Shown here: piece after piece, positions 45,942-59,540 of the stretch
Layout: the number at the start of each line of letters is the position of its first letter
Numbering within the stretch: position 1 is the stretch's first letter
IMG/VR virus record: IMGVR_UViG_3300035698_010479
Coordinates: 1 to 64,000 of that record
Direction: 5' to 3' (one strand)
Length of the DNA stretch: 64,000 nucleotides
Translations under genes and position numbers: made by a program
The notes under the pieces: model-generated
The model's input: the letters and a program-made list of their open reading frames with translations, nothing else
Databases searched by the model: none
What the model was told of the DNA's origin: nothing

Positions 45942-46457
45942 AAATTGAGATTACTATTACACTAAAGGCACACGCTGAAGAAATATTAAGGGAATAAACG
46001 CTTATCTAGAGATAAGATTGTGACTACGCTAGCCGTGTAGAATACTCGACAGTATATATGCCTTAAAGCCTCGTAACTTAGTGTAGTAGTGATATTTAAA
46101 GGAGCTAAATGCAAACATCAAGCATAGTATTTGTTGTATTAATTATTGTAAATATTATAGTTGTAAATTTATTTTTTGAATGTAAAAAGACTAATAATTA
46201 TTATCCTTATTTTTATGCGTGTTTTGGTGGTATAGGTACATGGCTACTTGGTACTTATATATTTTGTAGGTTTTTAGTTAAACGTTATAATATAAAATTT
46301 TTTTAGGTTAGGATTATTGTAAGACGCTGCACAAGAGCTATTACAAAATTTAGGGTTGGTAGTTTCTTTCAGACAGTTTGGACATATTGTCATAGTATTT
46401 TTTCCTTATTCGAATTGGTTATGTTATACTTAAGTATAGCTAGTTAATTCGAATAAA

Positions 46458-46532
46458 GGGCGTGTAGCTCAGCTAGGTTAGAGCACTCCCCTCATGAGGG
46501 AGACGTCCAAGGTTCGATTCCTTGCGCGCCCA
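46458..46532 (+). tRNA. tRNA with CAT anticodon (Ile2 or elongator Met)
   Basis: GGGCGTG/CGCGCCC; CTCCC-CTCATGA-GGGAG; CAAGG-TTCGATT-CCTTG. Confidence 0.85.
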
Positions 46533-46656
46533 AATAAAATTTTGTACGTCGAGCCATTGCTGGTAAGTGGTGCTACTGCCGTAGATTAAAGAAGAGACAT
46601 ACTCCGCCCACGTACAATTAGTAATATAATATTAAAAATTAAACTTTAGGTGCTTT

Positions 46657-46968
46657 ATGAGTAAAACTTATAAAAGTATTCTAGGATATAAAGTAATTGA
46701 GGATTCAAGATTGGTAGTTGATGGACCATTAGTCACTGTCAAAAGAACCTTGTTCGAAAGATTATTTTCTTGGCCATGGCAACCTAAAGTAAGAGAAAAA
46801 ATAGTACCAAGTAAATTACCAAAAAAAGAAATACGTAAAACAGGCGAATATTTAATAATGCATCCGCTTGTTGCAAAAAGATTACGTATTTATATGAACT
46901 TTAAAAAATATTCTTTAGTTAGGTTATATCTTCTACAACATCTAAGAGAATCTAAACATATAAAATAG
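46657..46968 (+). CDS. hypothetical protein
   Basis: 103 aa; RT..ERLFSWPW.P...LIMHP motif seen in phage proteins. Confidence 0.6.
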   Translation: MSKTYKSILGYKVIEDSRLVVDGPLVTVKRTLFERLFSWPWQPKVREKIVPSKLPKKEIRKTGEYLIMHPLVAKRLRIYMNFKKYSLVRLYLLQHLRESKHIK

Positions 46969-46975
46969 GAGGATT

Positions 46976-47494
46976 ATGATATTTAATCCTAGTATACATG
47001 TAAGTAAAATGAGTCATCCAAAAAGTGTCGATCATAAAAGGTTCTTCGTTTACAAACAAGGCAAATGTTACTTAGGAGGAGCTTGTATTTCTCAACTACG
47101 TACATTCGCGACGCAGAGAAGAGATTCTCTTGACATATCAAAAGAAGTTGTTATATTAGAAACAAATGTGATATCTACATTATTAGATGCTGGTTTCTCT
47201 ATTGAGAAGATATCGGCTTCTTATGATAAATTAGTACAGGAATTTACTGAAGATAAAGAAAAATGTCAGCAAAGATATAAAGATGACTTGTATAAATGGT
47301 TAGGTATTATGGACATGCGGAAGGATACTTTTGATAAGTTCTATAATCTAGCTAGGCTATTAAGTGAGAGTGAGAGGTTTGAATTCGGTTACGAAGAATA
47401 TAGAAGTGCAAATTTAGCAGAAGATTTTGAGCTTAATCTAAGAGAATTAGTTGATATTGGGTTAGCACTTGTTAAAGATTTAAAACAAAAATAA
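46976..47494 (+). CDS. hypothetical protein
   Basis: AGGAGG RBS; 172 aa. Confidence 0.6.
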   Translation: MIFNPSIHVSKMSHPKSVDHKRFFVYKQGKCYLGGACISQLRTFATQRRDSLDISKEVVILETNVISTLLDAGFSIEKISASYDKLVQEFTEDKEKCQQRYKDDLYKWLGIMDMRKDTFDKFYNLARLLSESERFEFGYEEYRSANLAEDFELNLRELVDIGLALVKDLKQK

Positions 47495-47696
47495 CACGAG
47501 GTGTATATGCGTAGAAATAATGTAAAGAAAACAAAACATAATAAAATCAATCGGATGACTACTGATACTCTTACTGGTTTTATAAAAGAATTAGAAAAAG
47601 CAAATCAAGGTAATAGTAAAGTGTATGCTATGGCTATACAAACATTAGCATTATCCAAAAATAAAATTGTAAAATAAAACATATTAGGTGACCATT

Positions 47697-48350
47697 ATGA
47701 AAATGCTTATTCCTGTATTTTTATTAATATTCTTATTTTGTACACCAGCAATGGCTACTGTAATGAATTATGATGGTTGCCGGTATGATTGTCATGAAGA
47801 AAAAACAACTTACACAAAACGTTGGGATACTGTAAAAGAAATTAAACATACAGACATCGTGAAAGAAATGTTATATATTAATAGAACTTCTACACCAATA
47901 ATTGGTCCTAATGATATATTAAGACAATGTATTAACTATATTGAATACGATAAAATCAAAAATGGTGTCACTGCCGGAACAGTTACTGATTATACACTAA
48001 TAAACGGTAGAGTTGGTAATAAAAGTGGTGAAACCTTTGCTAGATGTGATGATCCTACAAATGAAAAATGGATTAAAAAATGGGTAGAGGAACTAGAAGT
48101 AGACAAAACTGTAACCTGGTCTGAATTTATTACAATACCAAATGAAGATTTATTTACTATAAGTAAGTGGGTATGTTTTCCACTAACTGAATCAGTGATT
48201 ACATATTTTCGTGGTGGTGGTGGGTATGATTATCCACATAACTATACACCACCAATAGGAAGTGCACCAGTACCGGAGCCATCTACAATATTGCTATTAG
48301 GGGTAGGTCTTTTAGGTTTTGCTTCCATAAGTAAATTTAGAAAGAAATAA
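47697..48350 (+). CDS. PEP-CTERM sorting-domain protein
   Basis: Signal peptide ending AMA; C-terminal APVPEPSTILLLGVGLLGFASISKFRKK. Confidence 0.85.
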   Translation: MKMLIPVFLLIFLFCTPAMATVMNYDGCRYDCHEEKTTYTKRWDTVKEIKHTDIVKEMLYINRTSTPIIGPNDILRQCINYIEYDKIKNGVTAGTVTDYTLINGRVGNKSGETFARCDDPTNEKWIKKWVEELEVDKTVTWSEFITIPNEDLFTISKWVCFPLTESVITYFRGGGGYDYPHNYTPPIGSAPVPEPSTILLLGVGLLGFASISKFRKK

Positions 48351-48386
48351 AATTGTATTACTAAACACAACTAAAGGAGTAAAGGA

Positions 48387-48653
48387 ATGGAAAAAAAAGG
48401 CACACTAAGAGACATGGTATCAGGAGTATTTTCATCATCATCGCCACCGGCTAAAAAGACATATGCACAAATTGTTTCAAAGTTCAGTGAAACACGTACA
48501 TAGTTGCAAACTTTGGTAGCAGATAGTGAAACAAATATCGCTAATCTAGATACTCAAATTGCACAGCTTGAAATAGAAAAAGAACGAGAAGCAGAAGAAA
48601 AAATTAGTGCTATTGGTACTTTGGATTTTCTGGATAAATTTATTAAATTTTAA
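48387..48653 (+). pseudogene. coiled-coil ORF with one in-frame TAG (48501-48503)
   Basis: AAGGAG RBS; the frame stays open and helical for 49 codons after the TAG. Confidence 0.55.
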
Positions 48654-49136
48654 GTATAATAAATACACTATGTGGAGGGGGTAGTAAAGATTGTGCAGCA
48701 CTGAAAACTCCGAGAAGTGCATCCCATGAAGTGACTTTCTTAACTGCTTGGATAAGTATGGGACTGGCTAGTCACCAAAGTGTGCTTCGGTCACACCACA
48801 ATCTTGTTGCAACATAATTAAGATAGTTACTCGATTAATTATGTAATTTTGGGTAGAGTAACTATATAAATCTTAGTTTATTACAAACGATGGTGTCTTA
48901 AGGTTTATGAATGGACATCTTAATGAATGGCGCAGAAACTTAAAACACAAGCGCAAGTCTTTGGACATCGAAGACGGACATCAGTAGGTTCCCTGGACGC
49001 GTGAACTGGGTTCCTACTGATTTTTATTTTATATTTATACTAGGTAGTTTATAGTGTATAGGTTGATACAATGTGCCTGGAATACACATTGACACTGCTG
49101 AACACTCTGTAATCTATCACGTATAAACTACCTATT

Positions 49137-49370
49137 ATGAATAATAAGATATTAGATCTACATGGAGTAAAACACGAAGATGTAAAGCAATTAGTAATTA
49201 ACTTTATAGAGAATAACTGGACAATAGAAGAAAGTTTAGTTGTAGTTACAGGACATAGTAGAAAGATGAAAAATATTGTTATAGTAGTACTTAATGAGTA
49301 TAAATTACAGTATATACCTGGGGATATATTTAATGAATTAGCCCCTAAAATTATATTTTGGGTGAGATAA
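49137..49370 (+). CDS. Smr/MutS2-like domain protein
   Basis: ILDLHGV...VVTGHS. Confidence 0.75.
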   Translation: MNNKILDLHGVKHEDVKQLVINFIENNWTIEESLVVVTGHSRKMKNIVIVVLNEYKLQYIPGDIFNELAPKIIFWVR

Positions 49371-50014
49371 TGTTAGTAAAAACTTTTGTACATTTTGTAT
49401 GTTTGCTAGTTGTGATTAGTGTATTATCAATTGCAAAAGAAGTGCGGGCTATACCGATAGTAGAGACAGGGTCTCAGTGGGAATACACAATTCTAAATAA
49501 CGATTTGTGGCCTAACTGGTCATCCGTTAATTACAATTCTTTTGATTGGCAAGGTAATAGTCAGTGGTATACTGGTTCTGCTGCCTTCGGTAATGAATAT
49601 GCTGGCGGATTGGCCTTTAATACTTATTGGCAAGCGAACCAAGATATGGCTTTACAATATAATTTTAATGTAGACGGTATTATATCAGGGCCAATAACAT
49701 TGAACGTAGCTTCTGATAATGGGTTTCTTGTTTTCATCAACGGTACTCAGGTCGCTAAAGAAAATGCAGAAGGATACACCAAATATTGGGAATACACTTT
49801 GGACATATCCAGTTTTTCTGATGTATTTAGATCACAAGGAACCAATATTATACAGGTACTTGCTGAAGATCATGGTGTAGCTACGTTTTTCGATCTTCAA
49901 ATGAATGCTAATGTTTCTGCTGCACCAGTACCTGAACCAGCTACCTTTTTATTACTTGGAGCTGGTTTAGTTGGTCTGTCAACCATACGAAGAAAAAAGG
50001 TTAGTAAAACATAA
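49370..50014 (+). CDS. PEP-CTERM protein with beta-sandwich (PA14/galactose-binding-like) domain
   Basis: Signal peptide; W.TG.AAFG, SDNGFLVFING; C-terminal APVPEPATFLLLGAGLVGLSTIRRKK. Confidence 0.85.
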   Translation: MLVKTFVHFVCLLVVISVLSIAKEVRAIPIVETGSQWEYTILNNDLWPNWSSVNYNSFDWQGNSQWYTGSAAFGNEYAGGLAFNTYWQANQDMALQYNFNVDGIISGPITLNVASDNGFLVFINGTQVAKENAEGYTKYWEYTLDISSFSDVFRSQGTNIIQVLAEDHGVATFFDLQMNANVSAAPVPEPATFLLLGAGLVGLSTIRRKKVSKT

Positions 50015-50353
50015 AAGATAAAAAACTTGTTTATACTGAGTATGATGTAAATATCCTGGCAGAAGCGCTTAAAAATGCTTTTAGTGCTGTTGGGTGTGAC
50101 TTACGCTGTTTTGATTGGTTAAGTTATAGACCAGATGATTATATTAAACAAGTTAAAGTTTTGTTGTAAATATGTGAGATTGGCTAAAAATTATTTGTTG
50201 TGGTGCTTTTTGCTGTTGATTAATTAACTAACCTTAATAACTTACACCAAATGGGGGACATCATGTAAACTTTATATTGCATATTTTATTTAGATATATT
50301 ATAATTAGTTTATTAGAGAGATGTAGTAGAAAGATGTTGATTGTTTTAAAGTT

Positions 50354-50433
50354 TAGTACTATAAGTAGTGTATAAATAGAGTTACTTCAATTGGCGAAAA
50401 AACACTCTGTTTGCTAGTTCTCTTATAGTACTA
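50354..50433 (+). ncRNA. Y-RNA-like element A (short form)
   Basis: 12-bp outer stem; AGTGTA-TAAATAGAG-TTACTTC ... CTCTGTTT-GCTAGTTC shared with five other copies. Confidence 0.6.
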
Positions 50434-50442
50434 TTTTTATTA

Positions 50443-50767
50443 GGGAGTGTGGTGGAACGGTATACACATGGGAGAGCTAGTAGCTCAGTCCCCCTCAAGT
50501 AGAAATACATGAGTAAACTGTGGGTTAATTCGGGAGAGTCTAAGTCGAAAGATAAGGCAATCGCGAGCCAAGCTGGAAATACATTTTCAGAAGGTGTACA
50601 GACTACTGGAGAGCTTGAGTGCTCTTAATAACCAGCTAGAACGCCCACTACCATAGCAGGTAATGCTGATGGTAAAGAGATAGTCGGTGTCTTTTAGAAA
50701 TAAAAGAACAACATGCTTAAAATCCCCCGGCAGTAATGCCGTAAGAGTTCGAATCTCTTCATTCCCA
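50443..50767 (+). tRNA. tRNA-Leu(TAA), intron-containing (exons 50443-50473 and 50716-50767)
   Basis: GGGAGTG/CATTCCC; spliced anticodon arm TGGGA-CTTAAAA-TCCCC; long variable arm; AAGAG-TTCGAAT-CTCTT. Confidence 0.82.
50474..50715 (+). mobile_element. group I intron (242 nt, no ORF) in tRNA-Leu(TAA)
   Basis: P AATTCGGGAG, Q AATCGCGAGC, R GTACAGACTA, S AAGAGATAGTC, P3 GTGGG/CCCAC, terminal G. Confidence 0.85.
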
Positions 50768-51181
50768 AATTAAAATTTGTTTTTATTTTTACCTCTATAT
50801 GTTGAAGTTTGTGCGTGAAATAAAGAAATACGGAGCTACCCGTCCCGAAGCTACTTAGTAGCGACTATGAGATGTTATGCTCAACGGGTTTTATTATATT
50901 AAACTAGTATCTGAAAATAAATGAGAATAGGAGTTATCAGTCCCTATCAATATACTAGTAATGGTATAGAGATATTAACGTATCAACTGGTGCAGTTTCT
51001 AAATAATAAGGGGGTATGAGGTGGTGGAGAATACAGATGATATAGTTTACAAATTAACTAAACGTGCAGAAATTAGAAGACAGATACCTACACGTAAGAG
51101 TGTTATTGAAGGTAAGCCAGATCGTATTGCAGACCTATTAGAGGAAGCTGCTTTAGAGATTATAAATTTAAGAAAAAAGTT

Positions 51182-51254
51182 GCCGGTGTAGTTCAGTTGG
51201 AAGAGCGCCTCCCTTGTAAGGAGGATGTCACGGGTTCGATTCCTGTTACCGGCT
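51182..51254 (+). tRNA. tRNA-Thr(TGT)
   Basis: GCCGGTG/TACCGGC; CCTCC-CTTGTAA-GGAGG; ACGGG-TTCGATT-CCTGT. Confidence 0.9.
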
Positions 51255-51275
51255 CAAAATAAAAAGGTGAGAAGC

Positions 51276-51485
51276 ATGGGTGTTTTAAACTGTGATAGAA
51301 CTGGTTGCGAAAACATAATGTGTGATCGTTATTCAGATAAATACGGTTATATATGTTGGGAATGTTTTAATGAATTAGTAGCAAAGAAAATACCTGTAGG
51401 AGATTTTATGCATACTGTTAAGGAAGACTATGAAGATAGCCCATATACAGAAAAGTTTTATGACAAAATTTTTGAATTAAGATAG
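51276..51485 (+). CDS. small Cys-rich hypothetical protein
   Basis: MGVLNCDRTGCENIMCDRYS...YICWEC; start moved downstream of the tRNA. Confidence 0.6.
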   Translation: MGVLNCDRTGCENIMCDRYSDKYGYICWECFNELVAKKIPVGDFMHTVKEDYEDSPYTEKFYDKIFELR

Positions 51486-51493
51486 TAGTAATA

Positions 51494-51567
51494 CGGGGCG
51501 TAGCGCAGTTTGGTGGCGCGTCTGGTTTGGGGCCAGAAGGTCGAGTGTTCGAATCACTCCGTCCCGA
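51494..51567 (+). tRNA. tRNA-Pro(TGG)
   Basis: CGGGGCG/CGTCCCG; TCTGG-TTTGGGG-CCAGA; GAGTG-TTCGAAT-CACTC. Confidence 0.92.
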
Positions 51568-51593
51568 AATAGTATAATAAATAAGGTGTTTAC

Positions 51594-52106
51594 ATGTTGT
51601 TATCTAGGATATTACAACAAACTTTACGTAAGATGTTTATAGCTATTTGTACTTATACTATTAGCTTAGTATGTTTATTAGGTGCTTATTCTTCAATAGC
51701 TACATATAAAAAACTTGACTTTTATTATAGTACTGTATATAATGTATTACCAGTAATTATTATAAAAGATCCTAATTATGTACTTTCAAAAACAGACCAA
51801 TTACTAAACGCTGAAGCAAAGCAAATAGGTCCTATAATAATTATATATTCTCAATTCAAGGATGACCATTTAAAGTTAGTTATCCATGAAAAAGAACATG
51901 TTAAACAAGGTTACAGTAAATTATTTGTATGGCATGTATATAAGTACAACACTGATACAAAGTATAGATTGTTAGCTGAATACAGTGCTTATAGTGCGGA
52001 GAATGCCTTTAATTTAGCCACAATAGTAATCATGCTGCATGATTTTTATAAGCTAGAAATGTCAGAAAAACAAATAATTACTGAAATAAAAAGCACAGAA
52101 AGTTAA
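51594..52106 (+). CDS. membrane-anchored HExxH (zincin-like) protein
   Basis: N-terminal hydrophobic helix; HEKEHVKQ ... E..AY. Confidence 0.55.
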   Translation: MLLSRILQQTLRKMFIAICTYTISLVCLLGAYSSIATYKKLDFYYSTVYNVLPVIIIKDPNYVLSKTDQLLNAEAKQIGPIIIIYSQFKDDHLKLVIHEKEHVKQGYSKLFVWHVYKYNTDTKYRLLAEYSAYSAENAFNLATIVIMLHDFYKLEMSEKQIITEIKSTES

Positions 52107-52120
52107 CTTAGGGTGATTAT

Positions 52121-53038
52121 ATGCATAACAGTTTACTAAAGCAGTTTTATAGTGTGGGTTTACAGCTTAAATTGCTTAAAAATCCTATGGGTGGTCGTCG
52201 AGCAAATAGAGATATCTTTCAAATGGATATAAAAAGAAAGGTAACTGGTACAAGACGTCGTGAGTGGTTTGAGATGTACCTCGGTCATGAAACTAATTTT
52301 ATACAAGTACTTGACATAGATCCTAAATTAAATCAAATTCTTCTTCTTGTACGTGAGACTCCACGTGAGTTTGTTGTTGAAGAAAGAAAAGGTTGGACTA
52401 GAAGCAGAATTGATACTAGAAGATCTCAACTTCGAAAGGAAAGAACTCCTTTCAAAGAAACAGAAAAACATTTTATAATTACTAACAAGACACCGGGTGG
52501 TAATAGACACTTCCTTATGGGTGTTGATGAGAGACAGTTATTTGTAGCACAGCTTAAAAATGGTGTCATAAATATTAATGAAGCCAGAAAGCAGCTTGGT
52601 AATACCGTCATGTTTCATGAAGGAAAAAGAAGGATGACTCCCAGCAGACAAGGTGAGTGGTTCTTCGTAGAAGCTACAAAAAAGCAAGAAGCAGTTATCG
52701 ATCTATTGCTTGAAAAGAAACGTATATTTATACTTAATAAAGCAAACATAGGTAGATACGCAGGTAGACCAAGAGGTAATCCACATACTGCCGATGAACT
52801 ACTTATATTACCAGCTAATGAACGATTACAAGTTGAAGCCCAGTCTTCCAAGTGGGCGAAAGAAAATAAAGATTTGACTAAGGTACGGCCTATTTACCCA
52901 ATAAGGACTAAAGAGGTATTTGTTCGGGGGTGTGTGAGACACATTGACCATAAGACGGTTAAGTACACAAAGTGGCACCAAGTTATTCTCAACAATGAGG
53001 GAGCTACCGCTAGTGCTACACAAAGTTGGATCGATTAA
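52121..53038 (+). CDS. hypothetical protein (RQGEWFF / His-rich C-terminal motif)
   Basis: 305-aa ORF; RQGEWFFV, NPH, VRH.DH. Confidence 0.65.
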   Translation: MHNSLLKQFYSVGLQLKLLKNPMGGRRANRDIFQMDIKRKVTGTRRREWFEMYLGHETNFIQVLDIDPKLNQILLLVRETPREFVVEERKGWTRSRIDTRRSQLRKERTPFKETEKHFIITNKTPGGNRHFLMGVDERQLFVAQLKNGVININEARKQLGNTVMFHEGKRRMTPSRQGEWFFVEATKKQEAVIDLLLEKKRIFILNKANIGRYAGRPRGNPHTADELLILPANERLQVEAQSSKWAKENKDLTKVRPIYPIRTKEVFVRGCVRHIDHKTVKYTKWHQVILNNEGATASATQSWID

Positions 53039-53329
53039 TTTTTATTTACAGTAGCAGTTACTAATGTAGGCATACATAAGTAAATGAACAGTTGCGGGGT
53101 CCGTAAACTCCAACTATGTAGAAAGTCATTACCGGACAAATACTTAATACATACTGATTGGGACTACTGTAAATAAATTCTTATTTGAATATGTTTTAAG
53201 CAACGAGTAGACGAAAAACACACGTAGGGAAACTTTGATAGGTAATAAGAAAATGCCTCAATAAACATAAGAGGACTTTCGTTGTATCTAAAAAGAACAA
53301 CCATAGTTAATCTACGTCGAAAGTTGTAT

Positions 53330-53402
<73 letters not shown>

Positions 53403-53416
53403 AATAAAATATGTAC

Positions 53417-53546
53417 TGCTATTTAGTGTAACGGCAAGCACGCTAAAATCTCCTTATTAGATAGTTCCTCATCTCACGATGACGGTGTATAATATGGTTA
53501 CTTCTAATCATAATAGAGAAGACTGGTTCGACTCCAGAAATAGCGA
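53417..53546 (+). ncRNA. Y-RNA-like element B (tRNA-framed form)
   Basis: Acceptor TGCTATT/AATAGCG, D arm, T arm CTGG-TTCGACT-CCAG; insert CCTTATTA-GATAGTTCC...CGGTGTA-TAATATGG-TTACTTC. Confidence 0.7.
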
Positions 53547-53561
53547 CCGTAGTTAAGACTT

Positions 53562-53708
53562 TGATCTGTAGCTCAGTTGGTAGAGCAGCTGTTTAAAAAA
53601 GCCTGTTTTTGTTTATTCCTCCTTTCTCCTCCTTCGTTGTGGACGGTGTAAAAAACAGATACTTCAATATGGCATAGCGGGTCATGGGTTCGAGTCCCAT
53701 CGGATCAA
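53562..53708 (+). ncRNA. Y-RNA-like element C (tRNA-framed form)
   Basis: TGATCTG/CGGATCA, TAGCTCAGTTGGTAGAGC, ATGGG-TTCGAGT-CCCAT; insert CTGTTTTT-GTTTATTCC...CGGTGTA-AAAAACAG-ATACTTC. Confidence 0.72.
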
Positions 53709-54020
53709 TAATTGTGTTTAAGTATACCAAATATTAGGGTGCGGTTGGTTTCGAAAGCCAATGAATCTAATTGAGAGCGGCGGAAAATACAGCGAGATGA
53801 GTTCGTGGTATACTTTATTATTTTAAATTAAGGAATTTATATGAGATACGATGATGATTTAACTGTAAAAGCTGTAAAAGAGTGGGGCCTTAAACATTTT
53901 GATTGGCCTATTCAAGTATACGATTGTAACCAAAATTTCGTAGTTACAAGCCGTAAACATGTAGTAACTGTACGTAAAAATTGTGGTACAGTTGATGTAT
54001 GTGACAAGATAGAAACATAA

Positions 54021-54093
54021 TGCGGGTTAGAGAAACGGTCATCTCGCTAGGCTCATATCCTGGAAACAACCTGTTCAACTCAGGTACCCGCTA
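54021..54093 (+). tRNA. tRNA-Met(CAT), initiator-like
   Basis: 1:72 mismatch (T/T); CTAGG-CTCATAT-CCTGG; ACCTG-TTCAACT-CAGGT. Confidence 0.78.
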
Positions 54094-54101
54094 AAATAAA
54101 T

Positions 54102-54192
54102 TTAAAACTTGAATGGTGAATAGTATGGTTACTTCTATAGACTCTTAATCTAACCAAAAAAAACCTTACTAGCTAGTTCCTTCAGGTTTTAA
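54102..54192 (+). ncRNA. Y-RNA-like element D (short form)
   Basis: TTAAAACTTGAA/TTCAGGTTTTAA stem; TGGTGAA-TAGTATGG-TTACTTC ... CCTTACTA-GCTAGTTCC. Confidence 0.68.
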
Positions 54193-54222
54193 TACCTCTT
54201 TAATTAAAACACGTAGTATATC

Positions 54223-54290
54223 TAGGGTGGTGAATAGCACAGTTACTTCACTGTAAATGAAAAAACAACTGTACTAGTTTGTTCCCTCTA
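54223..54290 (+). ncRNA. Y-RNA-like element E (short form), just upstream of Ro60
   Basis: TGGTGAA-TAGCACAG-TTACTTC ... CTGTACTA-GTTTGTTCC. Confidence 0.68.
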
Positions 54291-54315
54291 ATTTTGTGTT
54301 AAAGGAGAAAACACA

Positions 54316-55761
54316 ATGTCAAAGTTAAATAGAACAGTTCCGCAAATTAAAACTTTTAATGGCGCAGTAGCAAAACACATTTCTCCAGAAGCAATGCTAA
54401 GACGTTCTATAATGTCTTGCTTGTTATGGGAAAAAGAATTTTATGAGAGTGGTTCAACTATCGCACAACGTATTGAAAATCTCGTACCTCAAGTAGACCC
54501 AATGGTTGTAGCCGACCTCGCTATACTTGCAAGAACAAGGATGAATCTCAGACATGTACCATTGTTGATCATTAATACAATGTTAAAATTCACTGAACAT
54601 AGAAAATATGTCAGAGAAGTTATTAATCATGTTGTTAATCGTCCTGATGAAATGGGTGAACTTCTAACAATGTATTTTGGTGGTGGTACAAAAAATAAAC
54701 CCCTTGCAAATGCATTGAAAAAAGGTCTTGCTGATGTATTCTGTAAATTTAACGAGTACCAGTTGGCCAAGTATAATCGCGATGCGGCTATAAAATTACG
54801 TGATGTTCTATTTCTTACTCACGCAAAACCTGTAGATAACCAACAAGCAGTTCTTTGGAAAAAGCTTATAGGTGGATTTTGTAAAAATTGTGGTCAAAGT
54901 CATTACAATAAAGATACTAAGTGTATCGACGATAATTCAACAACAACCGATTGTTCACAGTATGATGAATTGGTACTGGCTACACCTGACACATGGGAAG
55001 TAGCGTTAAGTTCTGGTGGTGATAAGACCGCTCATTGGACACGTCTTCTGTCTGAAGGAAAGTTGGGCGCTCTGGCACTACTACGTAACTTACGTAATAT
55101 GCAGACAGCTGGTATTGAAAAGGATAAAATCGCAGATGCTTTTCAAAAAACTGACTTGAGTAAAGTACTACCTTATAGATACATTGCTGCAGCTAGATAC
55201 GCACCAAGTCTTGAGGGTGTGCTTGAAGAAGGTATGTTTAGAAGTCTGAAGGGTTATCAAAAAATGGAAGGTCATACTGTGCTATTAATTGACGTTTCCG
55301 GTAGTATGGATTGGGCACTTTCGGATAAATCTGATTTACGTAGGATTGATGCTGCGTGTGGTCTTGCAATGTTACTTCGTGAGACATGTGAAAAAGTAGA
55401 TATTTTTACATTCAGCACAAAACTGGTAGAAGTAGCACCAAGAAGAGGTTTTGCTCTGCGTGATGCTATAGTTGGTAGTCAAAACCATAGCTCTACATAT
55501 CTTGGAAAAGCTATTAAAGCTTTATTTTCAAACGATAGAAGTGAAAGTGCTTTTAAAGGCCGTAATCTTTCACCAAATCGTCTTATTGTTATTTCAGATG
55601 AGCAATCAAATGACAAAGTACCTGACCCAAAATGTGTTAGCTATATGATAAATGTAGCTTCTGCTAAAAACGGTGTTGGTTACGGGGCGTGGAATCATGT
55701 AGATGGCTTTAGTGAAGCAGTTGTACAATGGATTCAAGAATTGGAAAATGATAAAAAATAA
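54316..55761 (+). CDS. rsr: Ro60/TROVE-domain RNA-binding protein with vWA domain
   Basis: LWEKEFYESG, AR..MNLRH.P, RPDE, YQLAKY, PDTWE..LS, ALLRNLRN, LPYRY, DVSGSM (MIDAS), ISDEQ, GFSE. Confidence 0.93.
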   Translation: MSKLNRTVPQIKTFNGAVAKHISPEAMLRRSIMSCLLWEKEFYESGSTIAQRIENLVPQVDPMVVADLAILARTRMNLRHVPLLIINTMLKFTEHRKYVREVINHVVNRPDEMGELLTMYFGGGTKNKPLANALKKGLADVFCKFNEYQLAKYNRDAAIKLRDVLFLTHAKPVDNQQAVLWKKLIGGFCKNCGQSHYNKDTKCIDDNSTTTDCSQYDELVLATPDTWEVALSSGGDKTAHWTRLLSEGKLGALALLRNLRNMQTAGIEKDKIADAFQKTDLSKVLPYRYIAAARYAPSLEGVLEEGMFRSLKGYQKMEGHTVLLIDVSGSMDWALSDKSDLRRIDAACGLAMLLRETCEKVDIFTFSTKLVEVAPRRGFALRDAIVGSQNHSSTYLGKAIKALFSNDRSESAFKGRNLSPNRLIVISDEQSNDKVPDPKCVSYMINVASAKNGVGYGAWNHVDGFSEAVVQWIQELENDKK

Positions 55762-56100
55762 GTTATTTTAAATATGTGATACAAGTAGCTAGAGCCTAAC
55801 AAACTCTGGCTACTAAAGTATGTTACTACCATGTCATAATAGAGATTGACAAATTGTGATTATATGAGTATTGTGTATTTATTATTTCAGTAAGACTACT
55901 GGCAATAGTATTACTGAGCTTTTTAAGACTAAACGACAAGATAACAAGATGGACTTTTACATAAGTCATGCACAATCATCGCGATTACGCTACGACAAAG
56001 TAAACTCCTAGTTTGAGTCAGACAGTTTAAGCAACTAGGTTGAATGGGATAGGGTGGGTAATTTTTTATCATTAAAGATTAATTTAATACTTGGAGTTAT

Positions 56101-56424
56101 ATGGAAAGAGACCTTTGTGATTTGATGGCTAATGGTGGTGATTACTTCAATGAAACTAGCTATAATACAGAAGATGAGTATAGTAACAACAGATCCTTTG
56201 ATAGTAGGGATCTTGGAACTGCTATGACTTTTGGCGATATGCTAGCAGAAGAACGGTCATTATCTGACTTATTAGATTTTTCGGATGACCCAGCTGAGCT
56301 ATTAGAAGCGATAGAAGCAGAACATAATCAAGATAAAATACAACGTATAAGTCTCAAAAGCAGGCAAGCAGATGTACCAGCATTTGAACAATACGTTTAT
56401 CAAAAATGTGGAATAACTAGATAA
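56101..56424 (+). CDS. acidic hypothetical protein
   Basis: GGAG RBS; 107 aa. Confidence 0.55.
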   Translation: MERDLCDLMANGGDYFNETSYNTEDEYSNNRSFDSRDLGTAMTFGDMLAEERSLSDLLDFSDDPAELLEAIEAEHNQDKIQRISLKSRQADVPAFEQYVYQKCGITR

Positions 56425-56606
56425 TGCCTATTTATAATTATGAATGTAAGTGTGGGAAACAGTACGAATCAATGCAACGAATGGATACTAAAACAATTAT
56501 CTGTACGTGCGGTGAACAAGCTAAAAAAGTACCATCCCTATCTAATTTTCATTTAAAAGGTGGAGGTTGGGCTAAGGAAGGTTATAGTAATGGCTCAAAA
56601 AAGTAG
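56424..56606 (+). CDS. FmdB-family zinc-ribbon protein
   Basis: MPIYNYECKCG...CTCG...S...F.LKGGGW. Confidence 0.8.
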   Translation: MPIYNYECKCGKQYESMQRMDTKTIICTCGEQAKKVPSLSNFHLKGGGWAKEGYSNGSKK

Positions 56607-56904
56607 TTGTAAGTACGAAAATAATATGTTAAACTTGACTATAGGTAAACGATATAAATTTACTATTTTTGCGCATAACACACCTATAGTTGGTACAATA
56701 ATAATAAAAAATGTACGTGATGCAACACATCATTCTTACTGGGTGTCGTGGTGGAGTGAGGAAAGAAAACAAAACATAGGACATTATATTTTTGATTGTG
56801 GTTACGCAAATATGCACAGAACTATTGTATATAATATGCATAGCATAAGAACTTGTATCGAAGTGTCTCCTAGTTCAGATGCTTCTAAATGTTGAGAGGA
56901 TAAA

Positions 56905-57435
56905 ATGGCACTAATTGAAGACGCCATATTGTTTGCAGAAGAAGCTCATAGAGGTATGAAAAGGAAATTTGACGGTACTGCCTATATAAGACATCCTTTA
57001 TCAGTGATGGGTATATTATCTGGTTACTATTCACAACCTGAAGTACTGGCTGCTGGTGTTATACATGATACAGTAGAAGACTGTGAAGATGTTACATTGG
57101 AAGTAATCCATGAACGCTTTGGTGAAATAGTAGCTGGTTATGTATTTTATGTATCTGAGAAGTCAAGAAAAGATGATGGTAACAGGAAAGTTAGAAAAGC
57201 TATAGACTTAATACACTATAGTAAGGGTGGTTCAGTATCACAAGATATAAAACTTGCAGACATGTTAGATAACATTCCTTCAATGGTATTATTTAATCCA
57301 GTTTTTTCAAAAGTATATTTGGATGAGAAAATGCAATTATTAGGAGTATTGACAAAAGGTAATGTGGAATTAAAAAGTTTAGCTTTAAAATTAGTTACAA
57401 ACATGTTCGTACTCATAAATGATATAAAAATATAG
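56905..57435 (+). CDS. stand-alone HD hydrolase, (p)ppGpp hydrolase (SAH/Mesh1)-like
   Basis: AEEAH.G..RK..G..YI.HP, IHDTVED, RFG..VA, IKLAD.LDN. Confidence 0.85.
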   Translation: MALIEDAILFAEEAHRGMKRKFDGTAYIRHPLSVMGILSGYYSQPEVLAAGVIHDTVEDCEDVTLEVIHERFGEIVAGYVFYVSEKSRKDDGNRKVRKAIDLIHYSKGGSVSQDIKLADMLDNIPSMVLFNPVFSKVYLDEKMQLLGVLTKGNVELKSLALKLVTNMFVLINDIKI

Positions 57436-57447
57436 TAATCTAAATAA

Positions 57448-57576
57448 GACCAGTTAGCTCAACGGTAGAGCATTAAGCCACCTTATTAGCTAGTTCCCTA
57501 TGTAAATAGCGGTGTATAGTATGGTTACTTCTCTTATGATAAAAGAAAGATAAAGGTTCGAATCCTTTGCTGGTCA
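57448..57576 (+). ncRNA. Y-RNA-like element F (tRNA-framed form)
   Basis: GACCAGT/GCTGGTC, TAGCTCAACGGTAGAGC, AAAGG-TTCGAAT-CCTTT; insert CCTTATTA-GCTAGTTCC...CGGTGTA-TAGTATGG-TTACTTC. Confidence 0.72.
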
Positions 57577-57740
57577 AATTAAAAACGTTGGGGTTGATGT
57601 GCTAGTCCTCCATGTAAGTTCCATGGTAAACTTACAATAGTACGAAAGTATAAAACTGCAACTCTTTTCAGTTATCAGACTAAACTGTTCGTATTAACTT
57701 AATTGAATAGTAATGTATAGGAGATATATAAAAGAAGAAA

Positions 57741-58460
57741 ATGAAAGAAGAAACTGTAATAGATATTCTAGATATGAATTACCCTTTGCTTGTTAATTTT
57801 AAAGCAGCAGCACAGGGTACCTTTGCCCACAGTAAAGTGCTTTCAGACATACTAGAAAAGATTGGCAACGCTTTAGGTCTTAATAGTCGTTTATTAAAAA
57901 CTATAGGGCTTTATCATGATATAGGAAAAAGTATTACACCAATGCTGTATTCAGAGAACCAACCTGCCGATTTTAACCCTCATGATAAGCTTGAAGCATG
58001 GATATCTTTTGCTCTAGTTGCTGGACATGTAGCACACTCAGTACAAATACTTCTGACTGATCCAAACGTGCCTAAAGAGGTAGTCACTATATGTTCTCAA
58101 CATCATGGAACTACCCTTGCCTTGTACTTCTTTAAAAAGAGTGGAAGTACTGATGAAAATGAATTCAGATATAAAACACAGAGACCACAATCATTTGAAG
58201 CTGCTTTGTTAATGATTTGCGATCATCTAGAAGCTCGTATTAGATCTGAAATTAATAGTGGTAGAATTACCAACCAGGAGGGTATAGAGAATCTCGTTGA
58301 ATTAGTTTTTAATCATTTGGTGGATGATAATCAATTTGATGATGTTGTGGTTCCTAGTTTTAAAACACTTCGTAAACTAAAAATAGTTTTAAAAGAAGAG
58401 TTTTCAGAGCTTTTTAAAGATCATAAACGTATTGATTATACACAAGACACTGAAAAGTAA
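57741..58460 (+). CDS. stand-alone HD phosphodiesterase resembling the PgpH (7TM-HD, c-di-AMP PDE) catalytic domain
   Basis: A.GTF.HS, YHDIGK, ENQ, NPHD, QHHGTT, YFF, FRY..RPQS.EAALLM.CD..EA. Confidence 0.8.
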   Translation: MKEETVIDILDMNYPLLVNFKAAAQGTFAHSKVLSDILEKIGNALGLNSRLLKTIGLYHDIGKSITPMLYSENQPADFNPHDKLEAWISFALVAGHVAHSVQILLTDPNVPKEVVTICSQHHGTTLALYFFKKSGSTDENEFRYKTQRPQSFEAALLMICDHLEARIRSEINSGRITNQEGIENLVELVFNHLVDDNQFDDVVVPSFKTLRKLKIVLKEEFSELFKDHKRIDYTQDTEK

Positions 58461-58609
58461 TTAAGTATCTTCAATATAGTAACAACTCGTTGCCGTTGTA
58501 GAAGAACTACACGAGGATTGTATTTAAACACAATTACGTGGTCAATAAGAGTGCAGCTAGATCTGCCCAAATCTTCTGACTTGTATTAACAGTAGTATAT
58601 TATAACTAA

Positions 58610-58638
58610 TCCTTAGATGCTATGATGCGATAGGAGAA
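58610..58638 (+). promoter_or_regulatory. RBS-sequestering motif, copy 1 (before NMNAT-Nudix)
   Basis: TCCTTAGATGCTATGATGCGATAGGAGAA; TCCT can pair with AGGA. Confidence 0.45.
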
Positions 58639-58643
58639 GTGAA

Positions 58644-59540
58644 ATGAAAGAAAAACAAAATGCAGATGTAGGCGTAGTAATTGGTCGTTTTCAAGTAGAC
58701 GATCTCCACGAAGGTCATCTAAATCTACTTTCTACAGTAGAACAATCACACAGTAGACTTATAATCTTTATAGGTTTATCTTCATGTAAATGTACTTATA
58801 ACAATCCACTTGACTTTGAGTCGAGGCGAGCTATGTTACAAATACATTATCCAAAAGCAACCATCCTTTACATTAAAGACGTACATGACGACCTGTTTTG
58901 GTCTAAAGATCTCGATAATAAAATATCAGGTTTATTAGGTCCTGGTCAGACAGTCTGTCTTTATGGTAGTAGAGATTCATTTATTCCCTATTATCATGGT
59001 AAACTACCAGTAAGAGAGCTTGTTCAAGAAACTTATTTCTCAGGTACGGAGGTTCGTAAACAAGTAGCTATTAGATCCAATTCTTCTAGAGACTTTAGAG
59101 CTGGTGCTATATGGGCGCTAGGTAATCAGTATCCTTCTCCTAATTTTACAATTGATGTCGCTATATTTGATGATAATTTCACTCGAATTCTTCTTGGAAG
59201 GAAAGTGAAAGAAACAAAATATAGACTGATAGGTGGCTTTATTCAAAACTCTGAGAAGATTTCTGATGCAGTCGCAAGAGAAGCACTGGAAGAAACTCAT
59301 CTAGTATTAAATAATATTAAATACATTGATAGCTTCCCTTCAACTGATTGGCGTTACCGTAGCGAAAGAGATAAGATTACCACCATACTTCATACAGCAA
59401 CAATAAAATCAGGTGTGCCTGAACCGGATGATGACATCCATGAACTTCGTTGGTTTGATTTTAACAACGATATACTAGATCTAATTGTCCCCGAACATCT
59501 TGATATGCTAACTGTATTACTAAAGCTGTCAAGAAGTTAA
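58644..59540 (+). CDS. bifunctional NMN adenylyltransferase / Nudix (ADP-ribose pyrophosphatase), NadM-Nudix/NatV-like
   Basis: IGRFQ...HEGH, NPL....R, SGTEVR; Nudix box GGF...E....AV.REALEET. Confidence 0.9.
   Translation: MKEKQNADVGVVIGRFQVDDLHEGHLNLLSTVEQSHSRLIIFIGLSSCKCTYNNPLDFESRRAMLQIHYPKATILYIKDVHDDLFWSKDLDNKISGLLGPGQTVCLYGSRDSFIPYYHGKLPVRELVQETYFSGTEVRKQVAIRSNSSRDFRAGAIWALGNQYPSPNFTIDVAIFDDNFTRILLGRKVKETKYRLIGGFIQNSEKISDAVAREALEETHLVLNNIKYIDSFPSTDWRYRSERDKITTILHTATIKSGVPEPDDDIHELRWFDFNNDILDLIVPEHLDMLTVLLKLSRS

What the first reader, a model, noticed from the sequence alone, without database searches (positions are those of the whole stretch)
45951..58600. Field of unassigned structured RNAs, each closed by its own terminal stem
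Seen: ORF-free modules bounded by 8-15-bp stems at 45951-46092, 46542-46617, 49041-49134, 53041-53177 and 53720-53815. Less well-bounded structured tracts lie near 50790-50975, 53195-53325, 55775-56050, 57590-57700 and 58480-58600. Interiors are richer in G+C with small hairpins. The packaging matches that of the rRNA mimic and Y-like RNAs. Inference: a cassette library of small RNA decoys, ribozymes or Ro60 cargo.
Basis: partly seen in the sequence, partly recalled or inferred. Interest (0 to 1): 0.6.

Follow-up and report, generated by a model that had tools for sequence, protein, structure and literature searches.

The report
Phage tRNA/Ro60 island small RNAs
Between the tRNA genes and the Ro60 gene of a 228-kb salt-lake phage lie several small folded RNAs that match no described family; at least six are kept by selection in related phages, but what they do is not known.

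Summary
The window is the first 64 kb of a 228-kb viral contig. Positions 42.6-58.7 kb form a + strand island. It holds about 12 tRNA genes, a group I intron, a Ro60/Rsr gene with Y-RNA modules, two HD hydrolases and an NMNAT-Nudix gene.

Those of 13 bp or more are rarer than chance allows: the field has 3 perfect inverted repeats of 12 bp or more, against 0.29 expected. The 7-10-bp stems are at chance level. Only two modules have G+C above background.

Six tracts are real selected RNA structures:
- 49041-49134
- 53720-53815
- 57587-57690
- 53195-53328
- 55762-56075, directly 3' of Ro60
- 48655-49032

Their identity to relatives equals or exceeds that of neighbouring genes (76-91% against 65-83%). 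Substitutions in their stems keep the pairing.

Three modules (45951-46092, 46542-46617, 53041-53177) have no relatives. Two tracts (50790-50975, 58480-58600) have no support.

None matches Rfam, tRNA or ribozyme models. None of the stem-closed modules carries the Ro60-binding module. All are single copy and come and go between close relatives.

My best reading is lineage-specific stable small RNAs, cut from tRNA-containing transcripts. Expression could not be tested.

The parts
45951..46092 (+). Module M1, 9 nt after tRNA-Arg(UCU). It has a 15-bp terminal helix (one G-U) around a multi-hairpin interior.
   Evidence: Fold -36 kcal/mol, z -2.5 on the + strand; -30.1, z -1.2 on the - strand. No relative in L030, L003 or 1.1 Mb of loci. 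No Rfam match. Real stem, function unverified.
46542..46617 (+). Module M2, 9 nt after tRNA-Met. 76 nt, 7-bp closing stem, 49% G+C.
   Evidence: z -0.9. No relative. Not recognised by the tRNA model or by ARAGORN. Weakest of the five; may be chance or a decayed tRNA.
48655..49032 (+). About 370-nt conserved structured RNA ending in a long terminator hairpin.
   Evidence: Aligned with L030 and L003. 15 of 58 predicted pairs changed on both sides, against 1-4 with slid partners. 78% identity to L030. No Rfam match.
49041..49134 (+). Module M3. A 13-16-bp terminal helix, an inner 7-bp hairpin and a conserved largely unpaired stretch of about 30 nt. It ends 2 nt before the ATG of a small Smr-like ORF.
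   Evidence: z -3.8. In the L030 orthologue all 6 stem substitutions keep pairing: 2 double changes and 2 to G-U in the terminal helix, plus 2 more in the hairpin. Absent in L003, where the terminator is followed by a Shine-Dalgarno site and the ATG. The covariance model finds only the window and L030.
50790..50975 (.). Tract after tRNA-Leu. Not supported as a structured RNA.
   Evidence: z +0.95. No relative.
53041..53177 (.). Module M4. A 14-bp perfect terminal helix starting 3 nt after the stop codon of ORF 52121-53038.
   Evidence: z -4.3 on + and -4.5 on -, so no strand preference. No relative. The ORF's orthologue in L349 has no such module after it.
53195..53328 (+). Conserved RNA whose 3' end abuts the 5' end of tRNA-Asn. 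It holds a GACGAA motif near the 5' side.
   Evidence: 81% identity to L003. Also found in L032 but absent in L030. One hairpin shows a compensatory change. The overall predicted structure is weak (4 double changes against 0-2 with slid partners).
53720..53815 (+). Module M5, 11 nt after a tRNA/Y chimera. A 10-bp terminal helix, a 5-6-bp second helix and a T-arm-like hairpin (5-bp stem, loop UUCGAAA).
   Evidence: 91% identity to L030 (interior 95%) while the flanks are unalignable. 3 compensatory pairs and no breaks. + strand -23.0 against - strand -14.2 kcal/mol. Absent in L003. The covariance model finds only the window and L030.
54316..55761 (+). Ro60/Rsr orthologue, the protein around which the island is organised.
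   Evidence: Pfam TROVE E 2.7e-20, plus weak vWA-domain matches (vWA_Ro60 E 3.8e-05, 24.1 bits against a 27.7-bit cut-off). 26 viral and more than 80 metagenomic relatives.
55762..56075 (+). RNA directly 3' of Ro60. Two covarying hairpins (the second with loop CUGGCAA) and a 21-nt block that is nearly invariant between phages and begins GUUGAAUG.
   Evidence: Found at the same place in L030, L029, L032 and L003. 15 of 36 pairs changed on both sides, against 2-5 with slid partners. The block is unique in the genome. A conserved TTGACA-17-TATTGT at 55846-55874 may start a separate transcript of about 190 nt (inference).
57587..57690 (+). RNA 10 nt after the tRNA/Y chimera 57448-57576. A four-way junction closed by an 8-9-bp helix, followed by a further hairpin.
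   Evidence: 85% identity to L030. 4 compensatory pairs and no breaks. Absent after the orthologous chimera in L349.
58480..58600 (.). Tract before the NMNAT-Nudix gene. Not supported as a structured RNA.
   Evidence: z -0.7. Only the last 69 nt before the start codon (58576-58643) are conserved in L030, and a shorter stretch in L349, as expected for a 5' UTR with its ribosome-binding site.
50354..50433 (+). Free Y-RNA module just upstream of tRNA-Leu(UAA).
   Evidence: 12-bp terminal helix, z -3.4. Same motif as at 54093-54192 and 54205-54300. Conserved in L030, L031, L003 and L057.
53414..53708 (+). Two tRNA-like genes (53414-53550 and 53562-53708), each with the Ro60-type Y module inserted in or next to the anticodon arm. 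A third lies at 57448-57576.
   Evidence: tRNA model hits with 71-77-nt inserts. Repeat families D1, D3 and D6. ARAGORN at a lower threshold reads the anticodons as CAU and GAU.

Best explanation
The field is the non-coding part of a jumbo-phage 'RNA island': tRNA genes, a Ro60 gene with its Y-RNA modules, and repair or counter-defence enzymes, all on one strand.

At least six tracts are genuine RNA structures kept by selection. They are 49041-49134, 53720-53815, 57587-57690, 53195-53328, 55762-56075 and 48655-49032.

I think they are made as follows. They are transcribed together with the neighbouring tRNAs. Cuts by the tRNA-processing enzymes at the adjoining tRNA ends (RNase P at 5' ends, a 3' endonuclease at the CCA-less 3' ends) set them free. 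The long terminal helix then holds the two ends together and protects them from exonucleases, as in Y RNAs.

The products would be stable, lineage-specific small RNAs that act through their conserved interiors, most probably by binding a protein. The RNA directly 3' of Ro60 is the likeliest Ro60 partner. The partners of the others are unknown.

Shown: the structures, their selection, their strand, their single-copy cassette-like distribution and their tight spacing to tRNAs.
Inferred: co-transcription, processing, stability and trans action.
For: - Island context: Ro60; tRNAs and a group I intron; Y modules.
- Purifying selection: module identity to L030 is 76-91%, against 65-83% for eight neighbouring genes.
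- The interior of 53720-53815 is 95% identical while its flanks cannot be aligned.
The one exception is the innermost A-U pair of 53720-53815, which becomes A-A.
- Double-sided changes number 3-4 against 0-1 with slid partners in the two-sequence sets, and 15 against 2-5 for 55762-56075.
- G-U pairs and lower folding energies on the + strand point to RNA read in the direction of the genes.
- Modules start 9-11 nt after tRNA or chimera 3' ends, behind AAUAAAAU-like trailers. One ends exactly at a tRNA's 5' end. The tRNAs lack an encoded CCA.
- Long stems are locally enriched.
- Precedents: T4 makes two small RNAs of unknown role from its tRNA region (PMC3014915). Ro60 loci in bacteria and phages carry stem-closed Y RNAs (PMC4201824, PMC12135203).
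Against: - There is no expression evidence at all. Only DNA runs from salt-lake and wastewater metagenomes hold the sequence.
- Three of the five 'well-bounded' modules (45951-46092, 46542-46617, 53041-53177) have no relative, so nothing shows that they are selected.
- 53041-53177 folds equally well on either strand.
- Most covariation rests on two or three sequences.
- 49041-49134 ends 2 nt before a start codon and replaces the Shine-Dalgarno site seen in L003. That fits a cis-acting leader better than a free RNA.
- The stem-closed modules lack the Ro60 module. Two of them occur in only one other Ro60 phage.
Confidence: 0.45

Rival explanations
1. The modules are cis-acting leaders or insulators of the ORFs that follow them. 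They would be 5'-end stabilisers of mRNAs left with a processed 5' end after tRNA excision, or translational operators or riboswitch-like sensors. They would not be free RNAs.
For: - Each module lies upstream of a same-strand ORF: 46109, 46657, 49137, 53841, 56101 and 57741.
- 49041-49134 ends 2 nt before the ATG of a conserved ORF that has no Shine-Dalgarno site here or in L030. L003 lacks the module and has one.
- The T4 precedent of start sites buried in helices (PMC3014915).
Against: - The ORF after 53720-53815 is conserved in L003 without the module.
- Most modules stop 15-40 nt before a free Shine-Dalgarno site.
- 95% interior conservation is more than a stabilising hairpin needs.
- 53195-53328 is followed by a tRNA, not an ORF.
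Confidence: 0.25
2. The weaker tracts are chance hairpins in A+T-rich spacers, ordinary terminator or promoter regions, or decayed tRNA or gene remnants, with no function of their own. These are 46542-46617, 50790-50975 and 58480-58600, and possibly 45951-46092 and 53041-53177.
For: - Inverted repeats of 10 bp are near chance level: 76 against about 52.
- z-scores of -0.9, +0.95 and -0.7.
- No relatives.
- 53041-53177 has no strand preference.
Against: Helices of 14-15 bp are rare: inverted repeats of 13 bp or more average 1.5 per shuffled genome, and those of 12 bp or more number 3 in the field against 0.29 expected. 45951-46092 folds better on the + strand.
Confidence: 0.15
3. The modules are mobile or formerly mobile DNA: miniature inverted-repeat elements or footprints of homing-endonuclease traffic. 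The 'terminal stems' would then be terminal inverted repeats.
For: Presence/absence differences between close relatives at fixed sites. In L030 an HNH endonuclease gene fills the slot that holds 45951-46092 here.
Against: - Every module is single copy, and no ends are shared between modules.
- I saw no target-site duplications by eye.
- Orthologous copies show compensatory changes and G-U pairs that work only in + strand RNA.
- The interiors are under strong purifying selection.
Confidence: 0.07
4. Some modules are self-cleaving ribozymes of an undescribed class that cut the polycistronic tRNA/RNA transcript.
For: A compact, strongly conserved interior closed by a variable helix (53720-53815, 57587-57690) is typical of small ribozymes. 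Such ribozymes are often found in phage genomes (my own knowledge).
Against: No hammerhead, twister, twister-sister, pistol, hatchet or HDV-like model matches, even at E up to 10 with lax filters. The hammerhead-like words seen by eye are not in the order or register of any permutation. Only two phages carry each module.
Confidence: 0.06

Closest known systems
Bacterial and phage Y RNAs (YrlA, YrlB, D. radiodurans Yrn1; Yrl1 and Yrl2 of Thermus phage phiLo)
   Same: Encoded beside a Ro60 gene. The 5' and 3' ends are closed by a helix and the structured interior is lineage-variable. They are often linked to or derived from tRNA (PMC4201824, PMC12135203). The island holds six clear Y modules, and the RNA 3' of Ro60 carries a GUUGAAUG word close to the GNCGAAN0-1G Ro-binding motif.
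   Different: The five stem-closed modules lack both the GNCGAA motif and this clade's own Ro module. They have no tRNA-like T and D arms detectable by the tRNA model. They lie up to 8 kb from Ro60 and are not found in other Ro60 phages.
RNAC and RNAD of phage T4
   Same: Small RNAs transcribed from a phage tRNA gene cluster, with biological roles still unknown (PMC3014915).
   Different: No sequence relation was tested or is expected. The T4 RNAs are known to exist as RNAs, whereas here expression is not shown. This island holds many more of them, together with Ro60.
Large ornate phage RNAs found next to tRNA genes (GOLLD, ROOL). Cited from my own knowledge; both are Rfam families.
   Same: Structured non-coding RNAs of unknown function in phage genomes, typically next to tRNA genes.
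   Different: Those are 400-800 nt and belong to widespread families. Rfam finds none of them here. The present modules are 76-370 nt and lineage-specific.

Membership tests
Y RNA (Ro60 partner RNA) | Encoded next to a Ro60/Rsr gene | tested here: inconclusive
   55762-56075 abuts the Ro60 stop codon in five phages. 53720-53815 lies 0.5 kb upstream. The other modules lie 1-8 kb away, inside the same island.
Y RNA (Ro60 partner RNA) | Ro-binding motif (GNCGAAN0-1G, or this clade's GGUGWA...UAGUUCC bulged helix) next to the terminal stem | tested here: not met
   Pattern scans find the clade's module only at the six Y or chimera sites, never in the five stem-closed modules. Two other tracts carry near matches: GUUGAAUG in 55762-56075 and GACGAA in 53195-53328.
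Y RNA (Ro60 partner RNA) | Co-occurrence with Ro60 across genomes | tested here: not met
   Covariance models of 53720-53815 and 49041-49134 hit only the window and L030 among 97 sources (1.14 Mb) of phage Ro60 loci. The Y module itself is in 31 loci.
Y RNA (Ro60 partner RNA) | Physical binding to Ro60 | not testable with these tools
   Needs a gel-shift assay or immunoprecipitation with the protein of 54316-55761.
tRNA or tRNA-like RNA (including the YrlA tRNA-like domain) | Cloverleaf with T and D arms recognised by the tRNA covariance model or ARAGORN | tested here: not met
   RF00005 finds the tRNAs and chimeras but none of the modules at E up to 10. ARAGORN at 85% threshold adds only the chimeras. 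53720-53815 has one T-arm-like hairpin only.
Known self-cleaving ribozyme classes | Match to the class's covariance model | tested here: not met
   No Rfam ribozyme match in 42-60 kb at E up to 1, nor in the sub-regions searched at E up to 10. Self-cleavage itself is not testable here.
Miniature inverted-repeat transposable element | Several copies sharing terminal inverted repeats | tested here: not met
   No second copy of any module in the 228-kb genome or in related loci, and the ends differ between modules.
Stable RNAs of a phage tRNA operon (T4 RNAC/RNAD type) | Located within a tRNA gene cluster on the same strand | tested here: met
   The modules lie 0-11 nt from tRNA or chimera ends, on the same strand.
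Stable RNAs of a phage tRNA operon (T4 RNAC/RNAD type) | Accumulate as discrete processed RNAs | not testable with these tools
   No RNA run holds the phage. The contigs that were laid are DNA.

The most novel reading that the evidence does not exclude
The island is a modular, fast-turning-over RNA arsenal. Each stem-closed module would be a distinct protein-binding RNA, released by tRNA-type processing. It would either load Ro60 (or the exonuclease that Ro60 recruits) with a new specificity, or act as a decoy for a host RNA-targeting defence such as an anticodon nuclease. It would be swapped between phages like an anti-defence gene. The conserved RNA 3' of Ro60, with its invariant G-rich block, would be a new class of Ro60 partner.
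Probability: 0.15. Interest if true: 0.85.

Novelty: new variant of a known kind. Interest (0 to 1): 0.5.

Why it matters
Phage tRNA clusters have been known for fifty years to make small RNAs of unknown role. Ro60 is known to work through partner RNAs, but few phage examples have been studied.

This island gives a compact test bed: a phage Ro60, six clear Y modules in two topologies, and at least six further selected RNA structures that match no described family.

If the modules prove to be Ro60 adaptors or RNA decoys against host defences, they would show that phages exchange RNA-based counter-measures as cassettes. If they are only leaders or stabilisers, they still document how mRNAs and tRNAs are packed together in jumbo-phage operons.

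Tried and rejected
- Rfam at the gathering threshold on the whole window, and at E up to 1-10 on sub-regions: only tRNAs and one group I intron.
- Phage GenBank collection by blastn: only tRNA and intron matches, no close relative.
- Exact 14-mer scans of IMG/VR with cores of 53720-53815 and 49041-49134: more than 100 hits each, all chance or coding once re-scored with nhmmer.
- Covariance models R1 and R2: no further homologues.
- Searches for relatives of 45951-46660 and 53035-53180 in L003's whole record, and through neighbouring proteins: none. L030's, L032's and L029's records are not held for searching.
- RNA expression: no RNA run. The DNA contigs that were laid were identical to the window and gave no variants.
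- Antisense targets of the conserved unpaired stretches inside the phage genome: none.
- Consensus promoter and terminator scan: no enrichment (78 against 77.7; 4 against 7.3).
- Hammerhead-like words seen by eye in 45951-46092 and 53720-53815 are in the wrong order and register, so I rejected them.
- Coding under a changed code: I named TAG read-through only because the genome has a tRNA(CUA) and an in-frame TAG. It opens no + strand ORF in the modules.
- The slot after the chimera in L349 holds a small ORF, not a structured RNA.

Full report
WHERE WE ARE. The window is bases 1-64000 of a 228,458-bp IMG/VR virus record. It has about 34% G+C, and genes and GC skew run on the + strand. DNA of the same strain is found in salt-lake metagenomes. 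Non-coding DNA is concentrated in 42.6-58.7 kb: of 9.1 kb of gaps longer than 90 nt in the first 66 kb, about 5.7 kb lie there.

WHAT THE ISLAND HOLDS. Rfam and ARAGORN find tRNA-Leu(UAG), Gln, one further tRNA, Arg(UCU), Met, Thr, Pro, Asn and a second Met. They also find a tRNA-Leu(UAA) split by a 242-nt group I intron, and tRNA-model hits with 71-77-nt inserts. The proteins of the island are as follows:
- a Ro60/Rsr orthologue at 54316-55761 (TROVE, E 2.7e-20, with weaker vWA-domain matches below their cut-offs)
- two HD-domain hydrolases, one of the HD_4 family
- an NMNAT-Nudix fusion
- a weak Smr-like ORF
- two proteins with a PEP-CTERM motif
This is the kind of RNA-repair and counter-defence neighbourhood described for jumbo phages (PMC7824862).

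THE OBSERVATION. The tracts are free of + strand ORFs under table 11. They remain so with TAG read through, which I tried because the genome has a tRNA(CUA). Their weight differs. Perfect inverted repeats of 10 bp with a 40-170-nt interior are frequent by chance: 76 in the genome against about 52 in shuffles. Repeats of 12 bp or more are not: the field has 3 against 0.29 expected, and only 1 of 300 shuffles reaches 3. 45951-46092 adds a 15-bp helix with one G-U. Only 46542-46617 and 53720-53815 have G+C above background. Folding z-scores run from -4.3 to +0.95.

RELATIVES. The Ro60 protein brought in 26 viral and 80 metagenomic loci. The nearest are L030 (78% Ro60 identity, 264-kb contig), L031 (the same sequence), L029 (73%), L003 (68%, syntenic) and L032 (55%). 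Later, L349 came in through ORF 52121-53038.

Blastn and nhmmer find orthologues as follows:
- 49041-49134: L030
- 53720-53815: L030
- 57587-57690: L030
- 53195-53328: L003 and L032
- 55762-56075: L030, L029, L032 and L003
- 48741-49030: L030 and L003
Nothing was found for 45951-46092, 46542-46617, 53041-53177 or 50790-50975. For 58480-58600 only the last 69 nt before the next start codon are conserved.

SELECTION ON STRUCTURE. Identity to L030 is 91% for 53720-53815 (95% in its interior, with unalignable flanks), 85% for 57587-57690, 76% for 49041-49134 and for 55762-56075, and 78% for 48741-49030. Eight neighbouring genes are 65-83% identical at the DNA level.

In 53720-53815 two pairs changed on both sides (G-C to A-U, U-A to C-G) and only the innermost pair is lost. 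In 49041-49134 two pairs changed on both sides and two became G-U. Inner helices covary as well. In 53720-53815 a 5-6-bp helix changes U-A to C-G. In 49041-49134 the 7-bp hairpin changes C-G to U-A.

57587-57690 folds as a four-way junction plus a hairpin, with four double changes. With the 3' partners slid by 1-3 columns, double changes fall from 3-4 to 0-1 in the two-sequence sets. They fall from 15 to 2-5 for 55762-56075 (five sequences) and from 15 to 1-4 for 48655-49032. These structures were predicted on the same alignments, which favours them, so the helix test above is the cleaner one.

G-U pairs, and lower energies on the + strand for 45951-46092 (-36 against -30) and 53720-53815 (-23 against -14), place the structures in RNA of the gene strand. 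49041-49134 and 53041-53177 fold equally well on both strands.

THE RNA 3' OF RO60. 55762-56075 starts at the Ro60 stop codon in five phages. Its parts are:
- a first hairpin, with a loop holding CUGGCAA in three of the relatives but not in the window
- a conserved sigma-70-like TTGACA-17-TATTGT
- a second hairpin with loop CUGGCAA whose stem covaries in all five phages
- a long-range helix
- a 21-nt G-rich block beginning GUUGAAUG
The block is identical in three relatives, differs at one position in L032 and at three in the window, and occurs once in this genome. An IMG/VR scan for the block found one more phage. GUUGAAUG resembles the GNCGAAN0-1G word proposed as the Ro-binding site of bacterial Y RNAs (PMC4201824). 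It has U for C, as do this island's own Y modules. Position and motif make this RNA the best candidate for a further Ro60 partner. That is inference.

WHAT THE MODULES ARE NOT.
- No Rfam family matches.
- They are not tRNA-like to the tRNA model or to ARAGORN at a lowered threshold.
- They do not carry the Y module, which is present at six places here and 60 times in 31 related Ro60 loci.
- They are not repeated: every module is single copy.
- Two of them are not general companions of Ro60: covariance models find them only here and in L030 among 1.14 Mb of phage Ro60 loci.

CASSETTE BEHAVIOUR.
- 49041-49134 is absent from L003. There the terminator of the upstream RNA is followed directly by a Shine-Dalgarno site and the ATG of the same small ORF.
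- 53720-53815 is absent from L003, which has a 27-nt gap at that place.
- In L030 the slot after tRNA-Arg holds a second tRNA and an HNH endonuclease gene instead of 45951-46092.
- 53195-53328 is absent from L030.
- L349 has the orthologues of ORF 52121-53038 and of the chimera 57448-57576, but neither 53041-53177 nor 57587-57690.

HOW IT MOST LIKELY WORKS. The modules begin 9-11 nt after a tRNA or chimera 3' end, behind A/U-rich trailers of the AAUAAAAU type. One ends exactly at the 5' end of tRNA-Asn. The tRNAs have no encoded CCA. I therefore think the modules are co-transcribed with the tRNAs and freed by the cuts that mature the tRNAs. The terminal helix would then clamp and protect both ends, as in Y RNAs. 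The conserved interiors would bind a protein. Phage T4 sets the precedent with its two small RNAs from the tRNA region, whose roles are still unknown (PMC3014915).

Confidence that the six conserved tracts are functional RNA structures is high, about 0.85. Confidence in the processing and trans-acting model as a whole is about 0.45. The main rival is a cis-acting leader role. It is best supported for 49041-49134, which ends 2 nt before a start codon that has lost its Shine-Dalgarno site. Mobile DNA, chance and new ribozymes are less likely, for the reasons given under the rivals.

LIMITS. No expression data exist. Covariation rests on two to five sequences per RNA. Three of the five best-bounded modules are unverified beyond their thermodynamics and helix length. 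The records of L030, L029 and L032 could not be searched beyond the fetched loci.

OPERATORS' NOTES. Read laying was given 5,701 letters. A changed code was named only where the genome shows a suppressor tRNA and an in-frame TAG.

Noticed in passing
window 53414-53550, 53562-53708, 57448-57576; also L030 9110-9257, 9382-9515, 13074-13209: Three tRNA-shaped genes carry a 60-77-nt Ro60-type Y module: an 8-bp covarying helix flanked by GGUGWA, WUACUUC and GNUWGUUCC, with a bulged C. In two of them it sits between the D arm and an intact-looking anticodon arm (anticodons CAU and GAU). In effect this is a Y RNA in tRNA topology, the circular permutation of YrlA.
   Followed up: partly
window 50354-50433, 54093-54192, 54205-54300; 31 of about 108 phage Ro60 loci: The same module occurs circularly permuted as free, stem-closed Y RNAs. 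Their inner hairpins end in 7-nt anticodon-like loops (CUCUUAA, CUGUAAA). A strict pattern finds 60 instances of the two topologies in 31 related loci, with free covariation of the 8-bp helix. Rfam does not detect it.
   Followed up: partly
window 50443-50767: tRNA-Leu(UAA) is interrupted in the anticodon loop by a 242-nt group I intron (Rfam 65.6 bits). The orthologous tRNA-Leu genes of L030 and L003 have no intron.
   Followed up: partly
genome c82246-82322 and window 48387-48653: The phage encodes a tRNA with anticodon CUA. The small conserved ORF 48387-48653 has an in-frame TAG at 48501-48503 where L030 and L003 have Glu, and it stays conserved after it. This could be suppression, a recent nonsense change or a sequencing error.
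   Followed up: partly
window 46405-46457: A hairpin with a near-perfect 23-bp stem (z -6.7) ends directly at the 5' end of tRNA-Met 46458. It is long enough to be an RNase III-type site.
   Followed up: no
window 48655-49032: A conserved structured RNA of about 370 nt with its own long terminator. The terminator's loop (GACGCGUGAAYU) is conserved in three phages.
   Followed up: partly
window 49137-49370: A 77-aa ORF with an LDLHG word and a weak Smr-domain match (E 0.014, below Pfam's cut-off). It starts 2 nt after the helix of 49041-49134 and has no Shine-Dalgarno site.
   Followed up: no
window 56905-57435 and 58644-59540: An HD_4-family hydrolase (Pfam HD_4, E 2.3e-11) and an NMNAT-Nudix fusion lie beside Ro60. 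From my own knowledge, HD_4 is the family of (p)ppGpp hydrolases, and the fusion fits NAD+ salvage functions described for jumbo phages (PMC7824862).
   Followed up: no
L030 2684-3254: In the closest relative a free-standing HNH endonuclease gene lies in the tRNA cluster, at the place of 45951-46660 of the window.
   Followed up: no
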